Shown here in pieces: positions 11,943 through 22,371 of a DNA stretch of 64,000 bases. The notes under the pieces were generated by a model. It was not told the DNA's origin, ran no database searches, and saw only the letters and a program-made list of their open reading frames with translations. How positions within the stretch are numbered: position 1 is the first letter of the stretch; the number at the start of each line of letters is the position of its first letter. The DNA comes from Vitrella brassicaformis CCMP3155. Taxonomy: Eukaryota > Protista > Chromerida. A program made the translations under genes and the position numbers. Where the stretch lies: positions 87,043 through 151,042 of the forward strand of contig CDMY01000242.1 of assembly GCA_001179505.1 (NCBI GenBank). The letters are read 5' to 3'.

Positions 11943-12065
11943 TCACCCACCCACCTGCCACACCTCCATCTCGGTGCATGTGAAGGTGGACGTCTGCGCC
12001 AGTGTGCCGCTGCTCTTCTTATTGAATCTCCCCTTGAAGCCCTCCGACAGCTCATCCCTCTCGAT
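11943..12065 (-). pseudogene. C-terminal fragment of a TLDc domain (3' half of an interrupted exon)
   Basis: IERDELSEGFKGRFNKKSSGTLAQTSTFTCTEMEVWQVGG* aligns with the TLDc ends of the paralogs in this window. Confidence 0.85.
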
Positions 12066-12978
12066 GGGACCCCACGCGAATGAGTGTCGTCGAACTGTTA
12101 CGAGGGGGGAGGGGCCCCCGAGTAATGGGAGGCGATCGGCCAGACGGAGAGCATAGGAAAATGGCGGGCAACAAATATACACAGTTTGTCGAGAGTGATT
12201 TTTGGTCGCCTTGAGGTTGAGTGAGGTTGAGTACGTATCGCAGAAGGGCTGGACAAGAGGAGACGGCAGAGGTTTCGGCAGAATTCACGTGTGGCGCACA
12301 GAAACTGGCTTAGTTCCAAGTTTATCGTTCTGTTTGCTGAGTGCATGCGGCGAGTGTTGGGGAATAGGAAGCCTGCAATTACAAAGCCTTCGACGAGAGG
12401 AGCGATGCAATCCCCCCGGGCCTTAAAGGGCAGACGTGTAGGGATTCGAGGCAGACGATGATGCATAGGACGACGAGCGTATGTCGGTAGGACGGCAGGC
12501 ATTGGTATCGGTGGGTCTTTGCAAAGGGAGACTGCGCGCTGTCATGATGCGGAGGCGTGTTATGGGGGCGTCTTGCCTCAGAAGTGGACTGACCTTTTTG
12601 TGTGGTTCAAGCTGTTTCAGTGACCGTTGTCGTCTTGTGCGGTGACTTGTGGCTCGAGAAACTTGTGTATATATATGCTCAGTCGCCCTCAAAATACGCC
12701 GGAAGATGTCCAGAGAGTACCTCAGTCTCTCACTGATTTCGCATCGTCAACGCACGTTCGACTTGCGCCTGCATCTGCGTAGGCCGCAGACGTATAGAGT
12801 AATTACGTACGGTCATCTTTGCATTGATTGATTTATCGTATTGCGTTCGCAGGATATCGATCAGATAGATCATCGGCATTCGTTGCCATGTGGTGAAGGT
12901 GAAGCCTACACAACCACACAACCGTGCGCTGCAGATGTGGATGTGTGTGTGTGTGTGTGTGTGGTGTCTTTCAGCCTT

Positions 12979-15900
12979 ATGGAGAATGATCAGCTGTCAC
13001 TGTCTAGTGGCGATTTCGTTGACGGATCGTCGGACTCGGATGATGATTTGTCGGCTGGTAACCGTCACGAGTCAGATGATGATTTTGTGCCCGAGACGTC
13101 GAACGAACCTGAGGAGTTTCAGACTGATGCGGCAGACCACGATCCTGAAGATGGGGAACAGCATGAGGAAGAGGAGCCATCTGATGAGCCAACAGCAGCG
13201 GCCGGCACTGGCAGGTCACAGCCATGTTGTCTCAATTGTGGGCTTCCTGGCCACAATTGTCGTACCTGTCCACTGGTGTGTCAATTGTGCGAGGACCCGG
13301 AATGCCCGAAGGGCCGCCGCTGCCCTAAGTTCAATCAATATCGGGCTTATCGACGCCCTGCAGTGCAACGACAGCAGCGTTCAGCAACCACCACTCGGTT
13401 CGTTCTCGACGACGCAGCAGCCAACCATGCGTTTGCAAGCGGCTGCTGTCACAATTGCGGTGGGGTGCCCATTCAAGGCTACCACATTCCGATGGTGCTA
13501 TTGTCGGTGCCTTTGAGTGCTCTTCGGCATCGAATGTGGCAGGAATCGCGAAGTGGTTTCCTTGGTCGCTTCGAGAGGATGCAAAACATCCGGCAGGCCG
13601 AGTACCAGCTGTGTGAGGAGTGCGCTTGTCACCTGTCGACTATGGATGGCCATCCGGCATATCGAAGTGTGAAATGCACGAGCTGGAGTGTGATGTGGCC
13701 CGCCGTGATTGCAGATAGCATCGGCAGAGGATCGATTGCGGATGCGATGAAGGTGTTGGATCTTCCGCCGCCATCAGTCACGGCATTTTGGGCGTCTGCT
13801 GCGCAGTTTTTCGACGTGTATAGCTTCCAGCATGGCCAGAGGGTGCTTCTGTCGTCTATTGGCCTCTTCGGTGCCGTCCCGATGTAAGTGAGTGAAGTCT
13901 CGGTTGATATGATGTCCACACTGTGTCTCTATGCAGTCATCCTATGAATCGACAGTCAGTGTTTCGAGACATGACAATCGAGAGGCCAGCGGCTATCGAT
14001 GCGATAGAGGGCCCCGCTCGCGACAAGTATTTGCAAGCGCGTGAGGCGTTTGACAAGCACCTTTTCGAGGTACGATATAATTTCGGGTATCCACGTTCGA
14101 GACGATGTGGGTCTGTGTGTGTGTGTGTGTGTATGTATGTGTGTGTGTCATCCAGGTGCGGTGCCCTCTGGGCTGTTGGGAGTTCATCGAGAAGACGTGG
14201 GTGCATCCTTTGGGACAAGTGTGGCATCTTGTCGATCGCAGCTACAGCGGGAAGCACACCATCGTGACGGACGGCTTTCGCACAGACTGGCTATCTTCGG
14301 ATATCGACCCGCGATTCTTCTCGTGGACGGTGACGCCGTGTCTCGTTTGGGACCGCAAGTTAGGCTTGGCCTACTGTTCCTGTCACGAGCATCCAAACAT
14401 GAGGGAAGTGGGCAAGAGGTTCTTCTTCCACGTCCCGAGAAACCCCTTCATGCCCGGCATCGTGACTCCTACGGATGCCGACCGCCTTGCAAGAGTCGTC
14501 GCGCAGCCTCACTACTTCAAGTCCCGGCGTGTTGGGCCAAATTGTGCTACGACGAGCATGTTGCATCTCAATGTAAAGTACGATGGTGTATCGTCCTTCA
14601 GTTTGGCGTTACGGGGCCGATTCGATCGTCGAGATCCTCGTCTCTATGCTCTGGAAGGGTCCATGTTGAGCTGCCATCGCCAGCTGCGTGAATATCATCT
14701 TGTGGATGAGGACCCTGATCACGTCTTTTGGGTCGAGGAGCAGATGGCGGGCTACAAGCGAGAGTATGCAGCCGAGTCGGCTCGCGCGGCTCGTGAGCCT
14801 TTTCATGGTGTAGAGGGCTGTGGAGGTACTTATATGCCGCTGAGCGATGCGCAAGATGACTTCACTGCCTTTATGGCCACGGACTCTATCGATGCGGACG
14901 ATCGAAACCAGCCGAGACATCAGGGAGATCAGTCGGGCGCCCGGCAGAGGCAGGATGAAGGACAAGATGATGATAATGATAATGATGGTGATGCTGATCG
15001 TCCGGGCGATGTTGACAATCGACCTGATGGTCGCCGCCATCAGCCATCCCAGCGGCCCATCATCCTCAGGCCCCTGTGTCTCGTGCATCCAACGACGCCC
15101 CACGGAGCGACTGTCCGCCCTATCCCATGTCTGAATCATCCGTTTGGCGACCTCTATCTATTTGCCCGACTTGTGACAATGTCGCCAGCATTGTGGCGCT
15201 CCATGATTCAGTGTGTGAGACAGATACAGCCACCATCGAGGCCTCGCGATGGTGCGTCATTGGATTCCAACGCCCACCCATCTGCCGTCGATGTTCACGT
15301 TGGAGAGCGGCGGTGGCTGACTGACGCTGTCAAGTTTGTTACGAGCATCGTCGAAAAGCAGGCAGCGAGCAGTGTCCGGCAGCATGGGAGAGGGCGACAT
15401 ATGGCCACCAGCTTCCCCAATTTTACATCCGCATTCATGAACGCGCCTGGTCGACAGCCCTTTTCACCCAACATGGTCCTGAGTGGGATGATGTCTTGGG
15501 AGAGTGTGCTGAATGTGCCGTGGTTGGGTTCGCGAGGCGAGGGTGTCTCACTTGAAAGCATTCGGCATAGCCTCGGAATCAGCCTGCAGAGCCAGAGCCA
15601 GTTTTCACGCGACTTGAGGACGGCGCATTTGCAGAGCTTGCCGGCGCCGTCGGTGTTGCCGAAGGTGTTGTTTTTTATGAACAGTCAACGTCCACAAGGG
15701 GATGGTGTTTCATCGGGTGAGTCAACAATAGAGGTGATTGGTGTGGCATCTTTTCACACGACTTTGAATTCTGCAGACGCATTGGAGCGAATCGTCACGA
15801 CCTTTGATTTTCGCAACCAGCAGGCCTACGATCTTGTCGGTATCGTCTCTGTGCTCCCTCGTGATGCAACTCATCGTCTAACACGTGACGAGCTGCGCTA

Positions 15901-17035
15901 TGGAGCTGCCAGCTATCAGGCAGCAGCCCTTCTGCGGTGGGGCGCTGACCATCCTGGCTGGTGGTTTGCCAAAGACGGCCGACAGCCTCAGCGCGCATGC
16001 AGTCTCTCAGCTGAGACACAAGCCAAAGAGTGTGCCCGGCAGGTCCTTTCCTCTTGGACTACGATGATGTTTGTGCGTCGAGCTGCTCAGGTCCCGGACG
16101 ACATGCTTGAGCGGCAACGGGAGCTTCTTGCTGGCCAGTCCGTCGTCAAATGTCGAGATCATGATCGTTACTTTCTCGTGGCCGTCTCCCCCAAGTCTCC
16201 GCTGCAGGAGGTGTTGTCGTGCTGCTGGCCGCCCTTCGATGCCAGTCAAGACAGTGTCCGTGTGCGCCCGGCGACTTGCAATGCCAAAGTCGTCCGCTAC
16301 TCATGCCCTCACAAGTCCTTTTGGGGGAGCTCTATGGGGCGGTGTTGCCTGGTCGACCTCTGCGCAAAGCATTTCAATCAGCTGAGCACGGAAGTGGCAT
16401 TCTCTGACGGCAGCGATGGCATGTCTCGGTCGATGTGTATGCGGCCACGGCCTGAGCCCCAGCCTCGTACATCGCAACCCAACACATCAGCAGCTGCACG
16501 AGCCGCCCCGCCGTCCACGCACCCAGCAGCACCCCCACCACCCGCACAAGCTGACGATTCAGGTGACGATGAAGAGGAGGCGGTCCATGCGGAGCAAGAG
16601 TGGGAGCAGATCAATCAGGCGCTGCGCCAGGAGCCTTTGGATGAGAAGCCCTTCGGTCCGCAAGACGCAGATGAGGAGGCGGAACATGCGACATGGCAGC
16701 AGCTCGTGGATGATGCGGTGACCAACGTGGGACCAGTTGACTTCGGCACCGACAGCGCCGCCAAGGACCGCTACCTAGACACCGACAGCAGTCAACATGC
16801 TCTGTATGCTGTGAGCCCGTCTGGCGATCGCATCTGGGCTCACTGCGTCTTGAACCACTATCTGAGGCTACGCCGTGTTGTCGGTGACCTCGTTCGAAAG
16901 CTTCTCGAACTCGGCAGCTATGTTCTGACTCGCACTGCACCTGTTGTCAATGGCGCACCCATTGTTATGACGCAGATCTGCCAAGCCACCTGCAGCCTCT
17001 CTTTCGGCGGGTGCGTGCGTACCATTTCCGGATGA
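12979..17035 (+). CDS. ~1305-aa Cys/Zn-finger-rich protein encoded by the insertion (3 exons)
   Basis: Exons 12979-13883, 13937-14069 and 14156-17035 join in phases 2 and 0. Acidic N-terminus; CCHC knuckle CLNCGLPGHNCRTC; further clusters CHNCGG, LCEECACHL, CPLGCWEF, CSCHEH, CRDH...CC...C...C...CC...LCAKHF. No HUH, helicase, RT or DDE motif recognised. Confidence 0.8.
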
Positions 17036-17400
17036 AGGCGATGACGACCAGCTTGTTTTCGTCCTTGACCGCCTCTGACACGAACAACAGACATGGAGGG
17101 CTGGAACCCACCGTCCTTCTACATCTCCTCTTACTAAGCGCTGCACAATTGCGGATCGTTTTAACCGGCATCGTGGCGTGATGCCGTCCTGCTTCTTTCT
17201 CTTCGTCCCCCCGTTGCGAGCCTCACTCTGAACTCGCATCGCTTTTCTTCGTCTCGTTCATTGATGTATGTCCGCGCTTTTCACTCTCGTCTCTCCACTA
17301 CACATCCAACGCTAGCACTGCAGATACAAGCCTGCATCATGTGGACGTAAAGGTATATGTTGGTTGGCAACAGAGATATGTAGCGAAACAGAGACACGTT

Positions 17401-17533
17401 AAGCTTTCGTGTGCATCCATCAGACGAACACTCACGTGTGAGTCAATACGTAACACGCAATACGAAACAGTGTCAAACACGCTAAACTTTCGTCTGCATC
17501 CATCAAACAAACACTCATGTGTGAGTCAATACG
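17401..17533. repeat. Two imperfect ~50-bp direct repeats, each with an ACTCAC/GTGAGT palindrome
   Basis: AAGCTTTCGTGTGCATCCATCAGACGAACACTCACGTGTGAGTCAATACG versus AAACTTTCGTCTGCATCCATCAAACAAACACTCATGTGTGAGTCAATACG. Confidence 0.8.
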
Positions 17534-17633
17534 ACACAGTGAAAACCAAGCGGGGGGGGAGGAAGACACAATGTCAATTCGCCCGCTGCCGTTCATCCGC
17601 CGCGAGCTCCGCCAAAGCTCGCCGCCATCCTCT

Positions 17634-18085
17634 TCGATCCACTGCTGGCATCTGCTGAGGTCGGCCGCCGGACCAGAGAAGGCGATGGCCAACCACAGAC
17701 ACGCAGCACTGCAAGCGATGCCAGAGTGTCCACTGCTGCGTGTCCACCAGCCAGACGGACTTCAGCTGTCATTCATCTCATTTGCTGTGCTGTGTGTTGT
17801 CAGGCCAGCTTGGCGCATCCTTTGTCCGGATGGCGTCTGGCGTGGCAGGAGAGGGCTCTCCAACTGAGCGTGTTTGGCCACGAGTGAGCGCCCCAGCCGA
17901 GTGCGGAGAACGGCAGTCGAGAGGTCTATCTGCCTGAGGAACGTTGCTGTGCATCTGAGGATGCCGACCTCCCTGTCTTCGTGGATGGCGTCTCGCTTCT
18001 CGCGATGGATGAAATCTATCGATTCGTTCCCTCTTGCCGGAGGGATGGGCTGCCGGCTGCTGGGCACCGTCACATCATTCCCCAT
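17634..18085 (-). pseudogene. Chimeric pseudogene: truncated inverted paralog of the 18231 gene fused out of frame to ~30 codons of TLDc
   Basis: MGNDVT...SIDFIHREKRDAIH...EVGILRCTATFL...VLRTRLGRSLVAK..AQLESPLL, then WLVDTQQWT, then GIACSAACLWLAIAFSGPAADLSRCQQWIE. Confidence 0.75.
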
Positions 18086-18230
18086 CGCCTCACATCCGCC
18101 ACCTCTGCGAGATCAAATGGCAGGAGCGATCGCGGCAAGAGGGAGAAAAAAGGGAAGGAAACAGGCCACCTGTTCATCTGTCAGCGAGTCGGTCGCTGAG
18201 CAACTGATTTCATCCGTGAGTCGCCGGAAG

Positions 18231-19777
18231 ATGGGCAATAGCCACACTGCGGACAGATCTGGCGCCACCATCAATGACGAGTCACTTGATTTCCTCCACA
18301 AAGCCGACAGGGACGCCCTCCACACGTATGTATGCGAAGCACAAGCACCCGGCGATAAAAGAGCTCCATGAGCGCACTTGGGTCTGTGTATGCTGTGTGT
18401 GTGTGCAGCCGGTTTGAGGTCGGCAGCCTCAGAGCTACGGCGCATTTCCTCTGGGAAGTCGACTTCTCGCCATATGTCCTCCGCACCCGACTCAATCGCT
18501 GCCTCGTGGCCAAGGGATTGCAGGCCATCATCGCATTTGACGCTCAGCTGGAGAGTCCTCTGCTGCTGAAGGCCATCTGGCTGGTGGACACGCAGCAGTG
18601 GACCGAGGTGGTCAACGCGCTGAAGTTGGCGGCGCAGCTCGGCTTCTGCACTCTGCCGGTCACCATCAGTTTGCAAGACATCCAAAGGCACACGACCAAA
18701 CAGGTGGCCGGGACGGAGGGCAGAGGCCAGGAGGGATGGCTCGATAGCTGTGTGGTGTGTCTGTTGCTGCAGGCGTATTTGGCCGAGCCGCGTGTTTTGG
18801 CGCTGTGGAAGATGATCGGTCGACACGTCGTCTTCGGCGGCAACTACGGCCGTTTTGAGCTGTTCGACCAGCAGGGCGGCGTGCGCGCCCTGCGTGACGA
18901 GCCGGGCTACGAGCTGTCCATCAATCCCCCCCTCCCCGCCACCCACCCATTCCACCCTCACACCATCAACGACAACCCGCCCGTCAGTTCCTTAATCCAC
19001 CTGAAGGGGGGCAGCTGGACGTCACTACCGGACTTGGCCACTTTTGCCTCGGCGTCGGCGTTCATCATGCGCATCATCATCGCGATGGCCCTTCCAGTGG
19101 AGAATTGGGGCAAAACTCCTTGGGTTCACGGGAACCGGTACACATGACACACCACACTCAGACACACAGATCCATTTATGACGGCCTCTCCTCTTTGTGT
19201 TTGTTTCTTCAGGCATGCTCACGGCGGTGTGCTGGACGGCCCCCTCAACCACTCGCCCCACCAGCCGCCCGACGGATGCACAGCCGTCGTGGCGTTCAGG
19301 ATGGACGATATGAATCCCCCTCTAGAGGGTCGCCTTCTGCTGCTGACCTCGTTCGACATGCCATTCGTCGCATGGGTCGTTCTCGTCAGCCGTGCTGACA
19401 CGAACATAGGTGAGACAGAGATGGCAGGTCCTCTGTGCTGATGATTGAGCCATTGTTTGACGTGTGGTGTTTCGCTGCATACAGTGGGTGTTTGTGTTTC
19501 CACCACTGAGCCGCCAGTGAGTGGTGCATCGGATACCTTCAAGGACCGCCGGCCGACTGCCGCCCCTCTGGTGCGCGGCCTGCTGAGCAACACCATCGCA
19601 GACATGATGATCTGCCAGAAAGAGAAAACTAAAGCAGTGAAGGTGGGTGCCTGTCAGAGTGGGGTGCAATGCGTGGTCCCTCATCCATCTCTCGGGTTTG
19701 GGTGTGTATATTGTGTTGTGTGCAGCCTGCAGGCGGACGAGGCGAGCTCTCGTGACGTGTGTGTAGTGTCCCCTTAG
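18231..19777 (+). CDS. Lineage-specific protein of unknown function with an N-myristoylation-like start
   Basis: MGNSHT... The intron 18326-18408 is phase 2, followed by a long open exon (FEVGSLRATAHFLWEVDF...PWVHGNR) and further GT-AG exons. The 3' end is approximate. Confidence 0.65.
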
Positions 19778-20289
19778 TTGGACCGGATGAGCGTGAGAGG
19801 GGCTGTGGCTGGTGCGTCACCGAGTCTATGGATGGATGGATGGATGTCGGTGGACGCCTCATGTGTGTGTACAGATCAACCATTGCATGCATGTTTGATA
19901 CACTCTACACCGTCCACAAACCAATGAGTCGAGGGGTGGATAGTTGGATGGCTGCACATGGGTTGATGGCCAGACAGACAGACAGACAGACATTTATGTC
20001 GTCATGACATGGCACGAATGAACGAATGAATGGGTCGTCAGCACATGCACCGTAGACATGCAGGCAAATCCATACACTCAGTCCGTCAAAGAATGGCATG
20101 TGACTACTTACTACTTTGAGAGAGCGGTTGGGCCTCTGCTCTGCTCTGTGCGATCACCTCAACACATCCACTACCTAAACCACACCAACACAGACACACA
20201 GGAAACAGTGAGGGTATCACCGTCAGTCACGAGTGCCCTGCTCTTTTGCATACCTGCTGCGCCCGTGGTGTCTTCGACGTTAGGTATGG

Positions 20290-22371
20290 TCAGCCGGTGG
20301 AAATCTGCACATCCATCCATCCATCCACAGACACGCGGATCGACACTTCCACACAGATGAGTGTGTGGTGACGGCCACCCACCTGCCAGATTTCCATCTC
20401 ATCGCACGTGAAGGTCTCGGACTTCGCCAATGTGCCGTTGCCCGTGCTGTCCCTCCGTCCCCTGTACCCCTCCGAAAGGCACTCCTTATTGATGCCCTGG
20501 TGGCACCGACTGAGGTCGGCCGCCGGACCAGGCTGGCCCCACCCCAACCACAGGTGCCCGCAAGCGATGCCACCCATGGCCACTTTCGCACGGTAGTCCA
20601 TATTGTGGGCCTTCACCACCCCCTGTGTGCCGGCCACCCCCACCGACTGCCTCCTCTCGGGCAGCTCGATCTTCGTCGGCGTCTCGTACGCACCCGACAG
20701 TGCATAGAAGAAGACGGGCGCCTTGTAGATGTTGGCCTTCGTGGGGTCCTTGGGCGGGTCGAGTGGGCTGTCGATGAAGCAGCCAAATCGGTGTGCGTCG
20801 CCATCTCGGAGGGCAAAGAGGAGGCCGCTCTTGCCCGCCACGCACTCGAGCATCTTAGGGAAGGCATACGTGTCGCGACTACCCCTGACGGACGACACAC
20901 AACACACACACAGAGACCCGAAGGCAGATCTTTCAGGGCCCCCTCGTTGCTGTCTGTGTGTGTGGCTCGCTGACTTGTATACGAGTGACGGCATTGGTGA
21001 GGTCTTGCCCGTCATCTTGAGCAGCTCCGCCATCTCGTCGTCAGTCTCGATGACGAAGCCGCCCCCCGCCACGCCGCTGAAGAAGGGCTCGTACTTCAGC
21101 CCATACATCTCAGTGTCGCCCTGTATCTGCCTGCAGTTGCTCGCCGTCGGTGACTTGACGATGCTGCCGGGCGGTGCGCACCGCCGTCTGCGGGCGAAGT
21201 CGATCACCTTCATGAGATGGTTGGGGCGGATGCACGACACACTCGAACCGCTGCAAGGAGGATGGGAAGGACGTACTTATGACGATTGTCCCTTTGGCTC
21301 GCTTGTGGTGTGTTGCCCACCTGTGGAAGGTTGTGTAGAGTCGTTTGTCGCGGCCAACACGCGCCAGTGTGGCCGCAGTGGTCGACACTGTCTTGTCCAG
21401 GACGCGCACACTCCTTATCTCGTCCACCCCTCCTCCCTGCCCCCCCTCCTCAGTGGCCAGCAGCGGCTTGACGGTCTTGTGGAAGTTGGCCAGGCCGCGC
21501 TGCACCTCGCCCAGCCGCCCCACTGACGCATCCAGGCTTGCAGTGCTGCTCTTGACTGTCGCCATGTGGTCGCCCTCCTCACCCTCCTTTCCCTCATCTT
21601 CATCGTCTTCCTCGCCCTCCTCGCCCTCCTCCTCCTCGCTCTCCAGCTCCAGTGCATCGAGTTGCATGTGGTCGTCATCGTTGGTGTGCGCGGCCGTTTC
21701 CGCGGGTGCGTCGATGTCGAGGCCGGTCTTGGTTGTGAAGAGGAGATGGTGCCAGAAGAGGGATGAGCTGTCGGTGTCGTGTGGAGGGGTCAGGAGGATC
21801 TCGTGGCTCTCGCCCTGGGCGTCAGCAGCACCGACACCGGTGACCTCGTCACGCAACCCGGTGAATGAAAGAACAGGCAACGCACAGCATGCATTCGGCT
21901 AATTCTATGTGAGTTCATCTACCCTCTCCCCCCACTCTCGACCCACCATTCCATATACACTGGATCAGCGTTGAGGAATGGCCGGCCCTCTGCGTCCTTG
22001 GGCAGCCCATCCAGATGGTACAGCAGCAGGTATGCGATGATGCTCTCACTCACGCCGGGCAGCAGCAGAGGCTTGCGCGGCACACACAGCACCGTCCCGC
22101 CCACATTGATCTCGATCTCCCCATCCAGTCGCCCCGTCACCATCAGCTGCCCTCCATTCCTCGTGATTAGGTCCTTGATCGTCTTGGCTTGCTGCCGCAG
22201 CTTCTTGCGCATCTGTTTGGCTGATTTCTGTATGGCGGCGAGTGCCTCATCGGCCTCCTGCAGCTCTCTATCAATGGTCGGGCGACAGATGGACGGGAGG
22301 GGCTCAAAGTCATCGCTGCCGTCCGCAGGCGACTCGGGCGACTCCTGCGCCTTGCGCTTCTTCGCAAACAT
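20290..22371 (-). CDS. BTB(T1/KCTD-like)-BTB-TLDc protein, copy 1
   Basis: MFAKKRKAQ... EIEINVGG...LPKDAEGRPFL (BTB); acidic linker; second BTB-like SVRVLDKTVSTTAATL; TLDc LLFALRDGDAHRFGCFID...FFYALSG...FTCDEMEIWQV. Confidence 0.8.

What the first reader, a model, noticed from the sequence alone, without database searches (positions are those of the whole stretch)
12979..17035. Intact ~1305-aa multi-Zn-finger cargo protein with no recognisable transposase
The element keeps a stop-free, three-exon gene with host-style (GT)n introns. Its motifs are LCEECACHL..WPAVI..FW, SVFRDMT..VRCPLGCWEF, CSCHEH..HVPRNP..DRLARVV and HCVLN. From memory they resemble the N-terminal part of giant Helitron-like Rep/PIF1 polyproteins seen in diatoms and invertebrates (not verified). 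The ORF stops where Rep would be expected to follow. An intact ORF without catalytic domains implies a recent internal deletion, a two-component system, or domestication.
Basis: partly seen in the sequence, partly recalled or inferred. Interest (0 to 1): 0.75.

Follow-up and report, generated by a model that had tools for sequence, protein, structure and literature searches.

The report
Truncated Helitron-like transposase gene remnant
The 1305-residue open reading frame is real, but it is the front part of a rolling-circle (Helitron-like) transposase gene whose catalytic parts were replaced by a backwards piece of a thioredoxin gene, so it is a broken transposon copy rather than a cargo gene.

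Summary
A stop-free three-exon ORF of 1305 codons lies at 12979-17035 in Vitrella brassicaformis, and its two introns match annotation CEL95992.1 and a 50%-diverged paralogue.

It sits in a 5.58-kb element (12061-17639). The ends are sharp, there are no inverted repeats, TCGAT lies at both ends, and there is a 3' subterminal hairpin. The genome holds about 25 copies, mostly internal-deletion derivatives.

The protein is not cargo. It is homologous (48-55% identity) to the first ~1250 residues of a longer gene on contig C13. That gene continues into an HUH/Y2 Rep-like region, a PIF1 helicase and a GIY-YIG nuclease.

A profile search of 1.8 billion proteins found relatives of its conserved Cys/His core. 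Among them are proteins of 1800-2500 aa carrying Helitron_like_N, PIF1 and GIY-YIG.

Homology stops at ~16876. There the element continues into an antisense, intron-containing thioredoxin gene fragment (16872-17246), and the last 52 codons are read from it.

So this is a non-autonomous chimeric Helitron-like copy. Another first-stage note on this same stretch (s1-216035) gave the same reading.

Whether the truncated protein is made or kept by selection is open. The official model adds a frame-shifting 58-nt intron.

The parts
12061..17639 (+). Whole mobile element, 5.58 kb; the longest of about 25 copies in the genome
   Evidence: Sharp loss of similarity at both ends in 12 fetched copies. The genome holds 25 left ends and 24 right ends.
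12061..12417 (+). 5' terminal block starting TCGATGGGACCCC; the best conserved non-coding part (91-97% identity between copies)
12979..13883 (+). Exon 1: acidic start, a CX2CX4HX4C pattern, and the LCEEC...WPAVI...FW motifs shared with remote relatives
13884..13936 (+). Intron 1 (53 nt, GTAAGT...CAG)
13937..14069 (+). Exon 2 (44 whole codons; the D[IM][ST] motif is conserved in paralogues and relatives)
14070..14155 (+). Intron 2 (86 nt, GTACGA...(TG)n...CAG)
14156..17035 (+). Exon 3 including the stop codon (959 codons)
14156..14875 (+). Conserved Cys/His core of the N-terminal domain. C3, C7, R42, D44, C76, H79, H92, P94, P97 and G144 are invariant or nearly so in 30+ relatives. No known fold was recognised.
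14544..14601 (+). 58-nt intron used only in public model CEL95992.1. It removes conserved coding sequence, shifts the frame and gives a stop near 14668.
16872..17246 (-). Fragment of a thioredoxin gene in antisense orientation: 5' flank, exon 1, intron 1, exon 2, intron 2 and part of exon 3. WCGPC is degraded to WCSAS.
   Evidence: 72% identity to C269:91922-92307. The C269 gene passes Pfam Thioredoxin at 43.8 bits.
16877..17032 (+). Last 52 codons of the ORF. They have no counterpart in the paralogues and are read from the antisense strand of the thioredoxin fragment.
17316..17639 (+). 3' terminal block shared with the deletion derivatives. It holds two tandem 83-nt units (17394-17549).
17602..17622 (+). 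Subterminal hairpin: a 7-bp stem (GCGAGCT/AGCTCGC) with a 7-nt loop, 12-17 nt before the end
   Evidence: The stem is kept in most copies while the loop varies. Fold energy is -8.1 kcal/mol with z-score only -1.4.
11947..12060 (.). Left flank: interrupted host sequence, continued at 17640-17676. Its uninterrupted paralogue lies at 20375-20531.

Best explanation
The ORF is the N-terminal ~1250 codons of the transposase gene of a Helitron-like rolling-circle transposon. In full-length relatives this gene encodes, in order: the N-terminal Cys/His domain, a Rep HUH/Y2 nuclease, a PIF1-type helicase and a GIY-YIG nuclease.

In this copy everything after codon ~1253 has been lost. It is replaced by about 375 bp of a thioredoxin gene in reverse orientation, followed by the element's normal 3' end. 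The frame runs on for 52 codons through that foreign DNA to a stop.

The element is therefore non-autonomous. It could move only if a related RepHel protein supplied in trans nicked at its TCGAT-bearing ends, unwound one strand as far as the 3' hairpin and inserted it at another TCGAT. These steps are inferred from the Helraiser model.

The truncated protein, if made, would carry the presumed DNA-binding part without any catalytic part. The frame is most likely still open because the truncation is young.
For: Shown by tools:
- Gene model and junctions.
- Element ends and about 25 copies with varied internal deletions.
- 48-55% identity to C13, C314 and C541 up to window ~16876-16903 and not beyond.
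- The C13 gene continues into PIF1 (28 bits against a cut-off of 25.9) and GIY-YIG (33.1 against 22.6).
- The C13 exon with the HLH and Y..K/Y motifs aligns to P0014 residues 930-1214 (E = 1e-6). The alignment starts inside that protein's Helitron_like_N match.
- Profile search: 33 hits. P0007, P0014, P0017 and P0029 carry Helitron_like_N, PIF1 or GIY-YIG behind the shared N domain.
- The thioredoxin fragment begins exactly at the point where homology is lost.
- Window-private divergence of the non-coding blocks is only 1.7-3.4%.

From the literature: the N-terminal 489 aa of Helraiser are needed for ssDNA binding and cleavage (PMC4778049).
Against: - No autonomous copy with the same ends was found in the assembly. 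All Rep/helicase copies belong to the C13 or C314 lineages.
- The Rep identity of the C13 lineage is indirect. Pfam and PDB sequence searches are blank, and hhalign against canonical Vitrella Helitron Rep gives only E = 0.004 at 8% probability.
- The 3' end lacks CTRR.
- The thioredoxin fragment is only 72% identical to the nearest genomic gene. This points to an old capture or a missing source.
- At 3% neutral divergence an open frame of this length has a probability of only 0.014. Some constraint on the truncated ORF is therefore not excluded.
Confidence: 0.8

Rival explanations
1. The truncated protein is kept by selection as a trans-acting factor. It could be an end-binding repressor, like the KP protein of deleted P elements (comparison from my own knowledge). 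It could be a partner of a separately encoded RepHel. Or it could be a host-domesticated DNA-binding protein.
For: - 1304 codons are open although window-private divergence in neighbouring non-coding DNA is 1.7-3.4%. Neutral decay at 2-3% leaves a 1-6% chance of no stop, before counting indels.
- All invariant residues of the N-domain core are retained.
- The thioredoxin fragment is 28% diverged from its nearest relative, which fits an old chimera.
- Both introns are retained and annotated.
Against: - The copy is unique. No second copy carries the same junction.
- It sits inside an interrupted host exon, like a plain insertion.
- Window-specific changes in exon 1 are 19 synonymous to 40 non-synonymous, close to neutral.
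- The tail is antisense junk.
- The public model splices out conserved coding sequence and truncates the protein.
- The private divergence may date from before the truncation, when the lineage was still autonomous.
Confidence: 0.14
2. The protein is itself an unrecognised transposase with a cryptic nuclease or recombinase. It would suffice to move the TCGAT-flanked family, for example by Crypton-like recombination at the 5-bp core.
For: - It is the only long ORF in the longest copy of a family of about 25 copies.
- The assembly holds no RepHel with matching ends.
- The same 5-bp sequence lies at both ends, with one copy at the empty site.
Against: - No Pfam family was found.
- No known fold was found for the best-modelled 240 residues.
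- In every longer relative the homologous region sits in front of Rep and helicase within the same gene.
- Its last 52 residues are antisense thioredoxin DNA.
Confidence: 0.04
3. It is a host zinc-finger gene captured as cargo by the element and unrelated to transposition.
For: The element has demonstrably captured host DNA, namely the thioredoxin fragment.
Against: - All homologues found are parts of Rep/PIF1/GIY-YIG polyproteins or fragments of TE copies.
- No cellular gene family was hit.
- The ORF begins directly after the element's 5' block, as a transposase gene does.
Confidence: 0.02

Closest known systems
Non-autonomous Helitrons carrying captured gene fragments (HLE1-type Helitrons; Helraiser/Helibat as the studied model)
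   Same: - The ORF is homologous to the front of RepHel-type polyproteins.
- The element starts with TC and has a hairpin shortly before the 3' end.
- It has no terminal inverted repeats.
- Many copies are internally deleted.
- It holds a DNA-level, intron-containing capture of a host gene fragment.
- If the cut is placed at TCGA^T, insertion can be read as falling between A and T.
   Different: - The 3' end is ...CTCTTCGAT(C), not CTRR.
- The same pentamer TCGAT lies at both ends and once at the empty site.
- Relatives carry a C-terminal GIY-YIG nuclease and a large N-terminal Cys/His domain with no Pfam model.
- The Rep region is too diverged for PF14214 in the Vitrella copies.
HLE2 (Helitron2/Helentron), including the Sphagnum family with a GIY-YIG domain reported in PMC11417382
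   Same: A RepHel element that also carries a GIY-YIG domain has been reported once.
   Different: - No short terminal inverted repeats are seen here.
- No T|T insertion signature is seen.
- No AP endonuclease is present.
- In the relatives found here GIY-YIG is fused in the same protein as PIF1, rather than described as captured.
IS91/ISCR and Replitrons (other Rep-mobilised transposons)
   Same: - Insertion is orientation-specific at a short fixed target.
- Short direct repeats lie at or near the termini.
- A palindrome lies near one end (PMC10288648).
   Different: - Those elements lack the fused PIF1 helicase.
- Replitron Rep has a single catalytic tyrosine (Y1).
- No sequence similarity was tested or found.
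KP-type truncated transposases of internally deleted P elements (from my own knowledge, not tested here)
   Same: An internal deletion leaves an ORF that encodes only the N-terminal, presumed DNA-binding part of the transposase.
   Different: - P elements are a different transposon class (DDE-like, THAP domain).
- Repressor activity is unknown here.

Membership tests
Helitron-like elements (RepHel rolling-circle transposons) | Encodes a Rep HUH nuclease with two catalytic tyrosines | tested here: not met
   Nothing was found in the window ORF, and PF14214 has no match on contig C242. Relatives have it: P0029 at 30.5 bits (over the cut-off), P0014 at 28.2 bits, and the C13 exon aligned to P0014 with HUH and YxxxY at E = 1e-6.
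Helitron-like elements (RepHel rolling-circle transposons) | Encodes a PIF1-type SF1B helicase fused to Rep | tested here: not met
   Absent from the window element. Present in C13 (PF05970, 28 bits against 25.9) and in P0007, P0014 and P0017.
Helitron-like elements (RepHel rolling-circle transposons) | For a non-autonomous member: sequence derived from an autonomous element's gene or ends | tested here: met
   The ORF is 48-55% identical over ~1250 residues to the front of the C13, C314 and C541 genes. Its core domain is found in RepHel-GIY-YIG proteins. No autonomous copy with the same ends was found.
Helitron-like elements (RepHel rolling-circle transposons) | 5' end TC, with a hairpin shortly before the 3' end | tested here: met
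   All copies start with TCGATGGG. A 7-bp stem lies 12-17 nt before the end and is kept in most copies. The fold z-score is only -1.4.
Helitron-like elements (RepHel rolling-circle transposons) | 3' end CTRR (HLE1) | tested here: not met
   Copies end in ...CCTCTTCGAT(C).
Helitron-like elements (RepHel rolling-circle transposons) | No target-site duplication; insertion between A and T (HLE1) or between T and T (HLE2) | tested here: inconclusive
   TCGAT lies at both ends and once at the paralogous empty site. This can be read as a 5-bp duplication, or as insertion at TCGA^T where the element's own 3' end repeats the target.
Helitron-like elements (RepHel rolling-circle transposons) | Capture of host gene fragments at DNA level | tested here: met
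   An antisense thioredoxin fragment with two introns lies at 16872-17246.
HLE2 / Helentron | Short terminal inverted repeats and an AP endonuclease domain | tested here: not met
   The ends are not complementary when the 13 aligned ends are inspected. Relatives carry GIY-YIG, not Exo_endo_phos.
Crypton (tyrosine-recombinase transposons) | Encodes a tyrosine recombinase | tested here: not met
   No Pfam match at E <= 1. Short direct repeats at the ends are the only shared trait.
DDE / KDZ transposases | RNase H-like DDE domain or KDZ/CxC domains | tested here: not met
   Pfam is blank. The model of exon-3 residues 1-240 matches no known fold. Residues 240-907 could not be modelled (pLDDT 31), so a fold-level test of that part is missing.
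Retroviral-type CCHC zinc knuckle | CX2CX4HX4C that binds zinc | tested here: inconclusive
   The pattern is present in exon 1 (CLNCGLPGHNCRTC). Pfam reports no zf-CCHC. In C13 the His is Tyr, and remote relatives keep only CxxC.

The most novel reading that the evidence does not exclude
The N-terminal Cys/His module, cut off from its nuclease and helicase, is kept intact by selection. It would act in trans as an end-binding regulator or partner of a so far undescribed alveolate lineage of Helitron-like elements (Rep + PIF1 + GIY-YIG, with TCGAT-flanked ends).
Probability: 0.14. Interest if true: 0.6.

Novelty: new variant of a known kind. Interest (0 to 1): 0.35.

Why it matters
For the finding as posed, the result is deflationary. 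The 'cargo protein without a transposase' is a truncated transposase gene in a broken, chimeric transposon copy.

Two by-products may be useful to transposon specialists.
- The ORF defines a conserved Cys/His N-terminal domain with no Pfam model and no recognisable fold. Its invariant residues are CPxGC...RxD...C..H...HxPxNP. It marks a lineage of RepHel proteins that carry a fused GIY-YIG nuclease. This lineage occurs in Vitrella, in Perkinsus olseni and in unnamed metagenome contigs.
- The family has clean, atypical ends: TCGAT on both sides, one copy at the empty site, and no CTRR.

Together these would let one test how a Helitron-type Rep chooses its cleavage sites, and what the large N-terminal region does.

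Tried and rejected
- Pfam on the three exons: no match.
- Word-index protein search with exon 3: no match.
- ESM Atlas: no usable hit.
- AlphaFold2 of exon-3 residues 1-907 with 10 rows: pLDDT 31, unusable.
- AlphaFold2 of residues 1-240 with 34 rows: pLDDT 69.9, but Foldseek/PDB gave nothing at E <= 0.001 and VIA-align gave at best Z 4.4.
- Rep test on C13 by Pfam and by PDB sequence and profile searches: blank.
- hhalign against canonical Vitrella Helitron Rep: weak (E = 0.004, probability 8%), hitting only the tyrosine motif.
- Search for the family's ends in the C13, C314 and C541 loci: none found.
- Terminal inverted repeats and LTRs: none. The repeat finder returned mostly (TG)n.
- dN/dS of exon 1 against three deletion derivatives gave 0.56, 0.28 and 0.99, too short and too mixed to decide.

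Not done or not possible:
- The spliced protein was never joined.
The 3.6-kb copy on C33, and the copies on C827, C458, C275 and C811, were therefore not read.
Full report
**Observation.** The window is part of contig C242 of a 72.7-Mb, 1064-contig assembly. Protein look-ups identify the organism as Vitrella brassicaformis CCMP3155.

Reading the DNA gives three exons:
- exon 1 at 12979-13883
- a 53-nt GTAAGT...CAG intron
- exon 2 at 13937-14069
- an 86-nt GTACGA...(TG)n...CAG intron
- exon 3 at 14156-17035

Each exon lies in a different frame, and together they give 1305 codons without a stop.

The public model CEL95992.1 (312 aa) contains exactly these two junctions. A paralogue on contig C13 is only about 50% identical in protein. 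It has introns at the same two positions, with other lengths (57 and 73 nt) and unrelated sequence. The gene structure is therefore real.

The public model differs in two ways. It starts at an internal Met, and it removes a further 58 nt (14544-14601). That stretch is conserved coding sequence in all relatives. Removing it shifts the frame to a stop near 14668. I could not check which form is expressed.

**The element around the ORF.** A DNA search of the genome and alignment of 12 fetched copies place the left end at 12061 (TCGATGGGACCCCACG...) and the right end at 17639 (...hairpin...CCATCCTCTTCGATC). The flanks are unrelated in every copy.

The genome holds 25 left and 24 right ends. The window copy, at 5.58 kb, is the longest. 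The others are internal-deletion derivatives with different breakpoints, for example 12586/17538, 12724/17335 and 13566/17387.

There are no inverted terminal repeats. A 7-bp stem lies 12-17 nt before the 3' end and is kept in most copies. Its fold energy is unremarkable (z = -1.4).

TCGAT stands at both ends. A paralogous, uninterrupted copy of the flanking host sequence at 20375-20531 has a single T(T)GAT at the corresponding place. The pentamer is therefore either duplicated on insertion, or it is the site cut both at the element's end and at the target. I confirmed the interruption but did not test the TLDc identity.

**What the protein is.** Pfam, the word-index search and the ESM Atlas gave nothing.

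Within the genome the ORF has paralogues on C13 (mostly open), C314 and C541 (both with stops), at 48-55% identity. Closer fragments (70-83%) lie on C380, C365, C729, C430, C212 and C952.

On C13 the gene does not stop where the window ORF stops. It runs on through two more introns into a region with the motif order PTYFYTVTLN, EFQ..G.FPHLHG and NVQIV...YL.K|Y.AGAEE. After that come a PIF1 helicase (28 bits, over the Pfam cut-off) and a GIY-YIG domain (33.1 bits, over the cut-off).

The Rep reading of that middle region could not be shown directly by Pfam or PDB sequence searches. It was only weakly supported by hhalign against canonical Vitrella Helitrons.

It is supported indirectly. A profile of exon 3 and its paralogues, searched against 1.84 billion proteins, gave 33 hits. 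Among them:
- P0014 (2201 aa): the shared N domain, Helitron_like_N (28.2 bits) and PIF1
- P0029 (1812 aa): Helitron_like_N at 30.5 bits, over the cut-off
- P0007 and P0017 (about 2500 aa): PIF1 plus GIY-YIG in one protein

The C13 exon aligns to P0014 residues 930-1214 at E = 1e-6. The alignment begins at the HUH motif inside the Pfam match and includes YxxxY. Its one large gap coincides with the C13 intron.

The relatives come from metagenomes and from Perkinsus olseni (KAF4716680.1).

These are CxxC...AWP...W in exon 1, D[IV]T in exon 2, and [VI]RCPxGCxE[FY]...RxD.L...C..H...HxPxNP...D.LA in exon 3. Residues C3, C7, R42, D44, C76, H79, H92, P94, P97 and G144 of exon 3 are invariant or nearly so. 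Weak collinear matches to P0007 continue through the rest of exon 3.

A model of exon-3 residues 1-240 (pLDDT 69.9) matches no solved fold.

By analogy with Helraiser, this region is most likely the DNA-binding part of the transposase. In Helraiser the N-terminal 489 residues are needed for ssDNA binding and cleavage (PMC4778049). This is an inference, since no sequence similarity to Helraiser was shown.

**Where and how the gene is truncated.** Similarity to all paralogues ends at 16876-16903 (...WAHCVLNHYLRLRR).

From 16872 to 17246 the element is 72% identical to the opposite strand of a thioredoxin gene on C269. The match covers 5' flank, exon 1, intron 1, exon 2, intron 2 and the start of exon 3. 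The C269 gene passes Pfam Thioredoxin.

The last 52 codons of the ORF are therefore antisense thioredoxin DNA. After 69 nt of unknown origin, the family's common 3' block begins at 17316.

The copy is thus a chimera: 5' end, then truncated transposase gene, then captured host gene fragment, then 3' end. This is the usual make-up of gene-carrying non-autonomous Helitrons.

No other copy shares these junctions.

**Is the open frame meaningful?** Bases private to the window copy make up 1.7-3.4% of the non-coding blocks.

For this ORF, 3.6% of single-base changes create a stop. The chance of staying open under neutral decay is 0.24 at 1% divergence, 0.06 at 2% and 0.014 at 3%, before counting indels.

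Window-specific changes in exon 1 are 19 synonymous to 40 non-synonymous, near neutral.

Differences between copies in exon 1 include only in-frame indels of 18, 27 and 3 nt. This suggests that much of the divergence arose while the lineages were still coding for working elements.

The simplest reading is a truncation late on this copy's branch. The 28% divergence of the thioredoxin fragment from its only genomic relative does not fit that comfortably. It needs either a missing source gene or an older chimera. I therefore leave about 14% for a truncated protein under selection.

**Comparison and novelty.** The element works like a non-autonomous Helitron. It fails two canonical HLE1/HLE2 features: it has no CTRR and no terminal inverted repeats.

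Its lineage combines RepHel with a fused GIY-YIG nuclease and a large N-terminal domain. My literature searches turned up no description of this N-terminal domain. They gave only one report of a GIY-YIG domain in a RepHel element, in a Sphagnum HLE2 family (PMC11417382).

Short direct repeats at the ends of Rep-mobilised elements are known from Replitrons and IS91 (PMC10288648).

I rate it a new variant of a known kind. The specific finding, an intact ORF without a catalytic domain, is explained in ordinary terms.

**Limits.**
- The spliced protein was never joined for a search or a fold. All searches were run exon by exon.
- No expression data could be consulted beyond MMETSP-derived ORFs of other, degenerate copies.

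Noticed in passing
L034 (C13:1-9000) and L037 (C13:8000-17999): A near full-length relative of about 10 kb. In order it holds the N-terminal Cys/His region, a Rep-like exon set, a PIF1 helicase and a GIY-YIG nuclease, with several introns. Its ends were not found, and it does not carry the TCGATGGG / CTCTTCGAT termini.
   Followed up: partly
window 12417/12418 versus loci L022, L024-L029, L033: Eight of the 12 fetched copies carry an extra 320-350 bp exactly between the positions matching 12417 and 12418. The window copy and L023, L030, L031 and L032 do not. This is either a nested insertion in one sub-lineage or a deletion in the other.
   Followed up: no
window 17866-22000: A different, abundant repeat or gene family lies directly downstream, with dozens of matches at 72-86% identity on many contigs. 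It includes the uninterrupted paralogue of the sequence that the element split.
   Followed up: no
window 17394-17549: Two tandem 83-nt units (82% identical) lie in the element's 3' block. Deletion derivatives align to either unit.
   Followed up: no
G000 contigs C366, C200, C571, C227, C219, C347, C239, C326: Canonical Helitron Rep domains (PF14214, up to 180 bits) occur elsewhere in the genome. Vitrella therefore hosts ordinary Helitrons beside the GIY-YIG lineage.
   Followed up: partly
G000 C314:17780-18193 (within L039): A decayed canonical Helitron_like_N match (37 bits, 4 stops) lies in the 11-kb gap between the N-terminal region and the Rep-like region of the C314 paralogue. It is probably a nested insertion of an ordinary Helitron.
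   Followed up: no
L053 (C269:90422-93807), about 1570-2200 +: An apparently intact multi-exon thioredoxin gene (WCGPC motif) is the only genomic relative of the fragment carried by the element, at only 72% identity.
   Followed up: partly
proteins P0003 and P0060 (MMETSP transcripts of Vitrella): Degenerate copies of the family, on C541 and in a frame-shifted exon-1 copy, are represented in transcriptome-derived ORFs. At least some family members are therefore transcribed.
   Followed up: partly
window 12936-12974: A (TG)n run followed by TTTCAG ends 4 nt before the ATG. It looks like the 3' end of an intron in the 5' untranslated region, so the true first exon may lie upstream.
   Followed up: no
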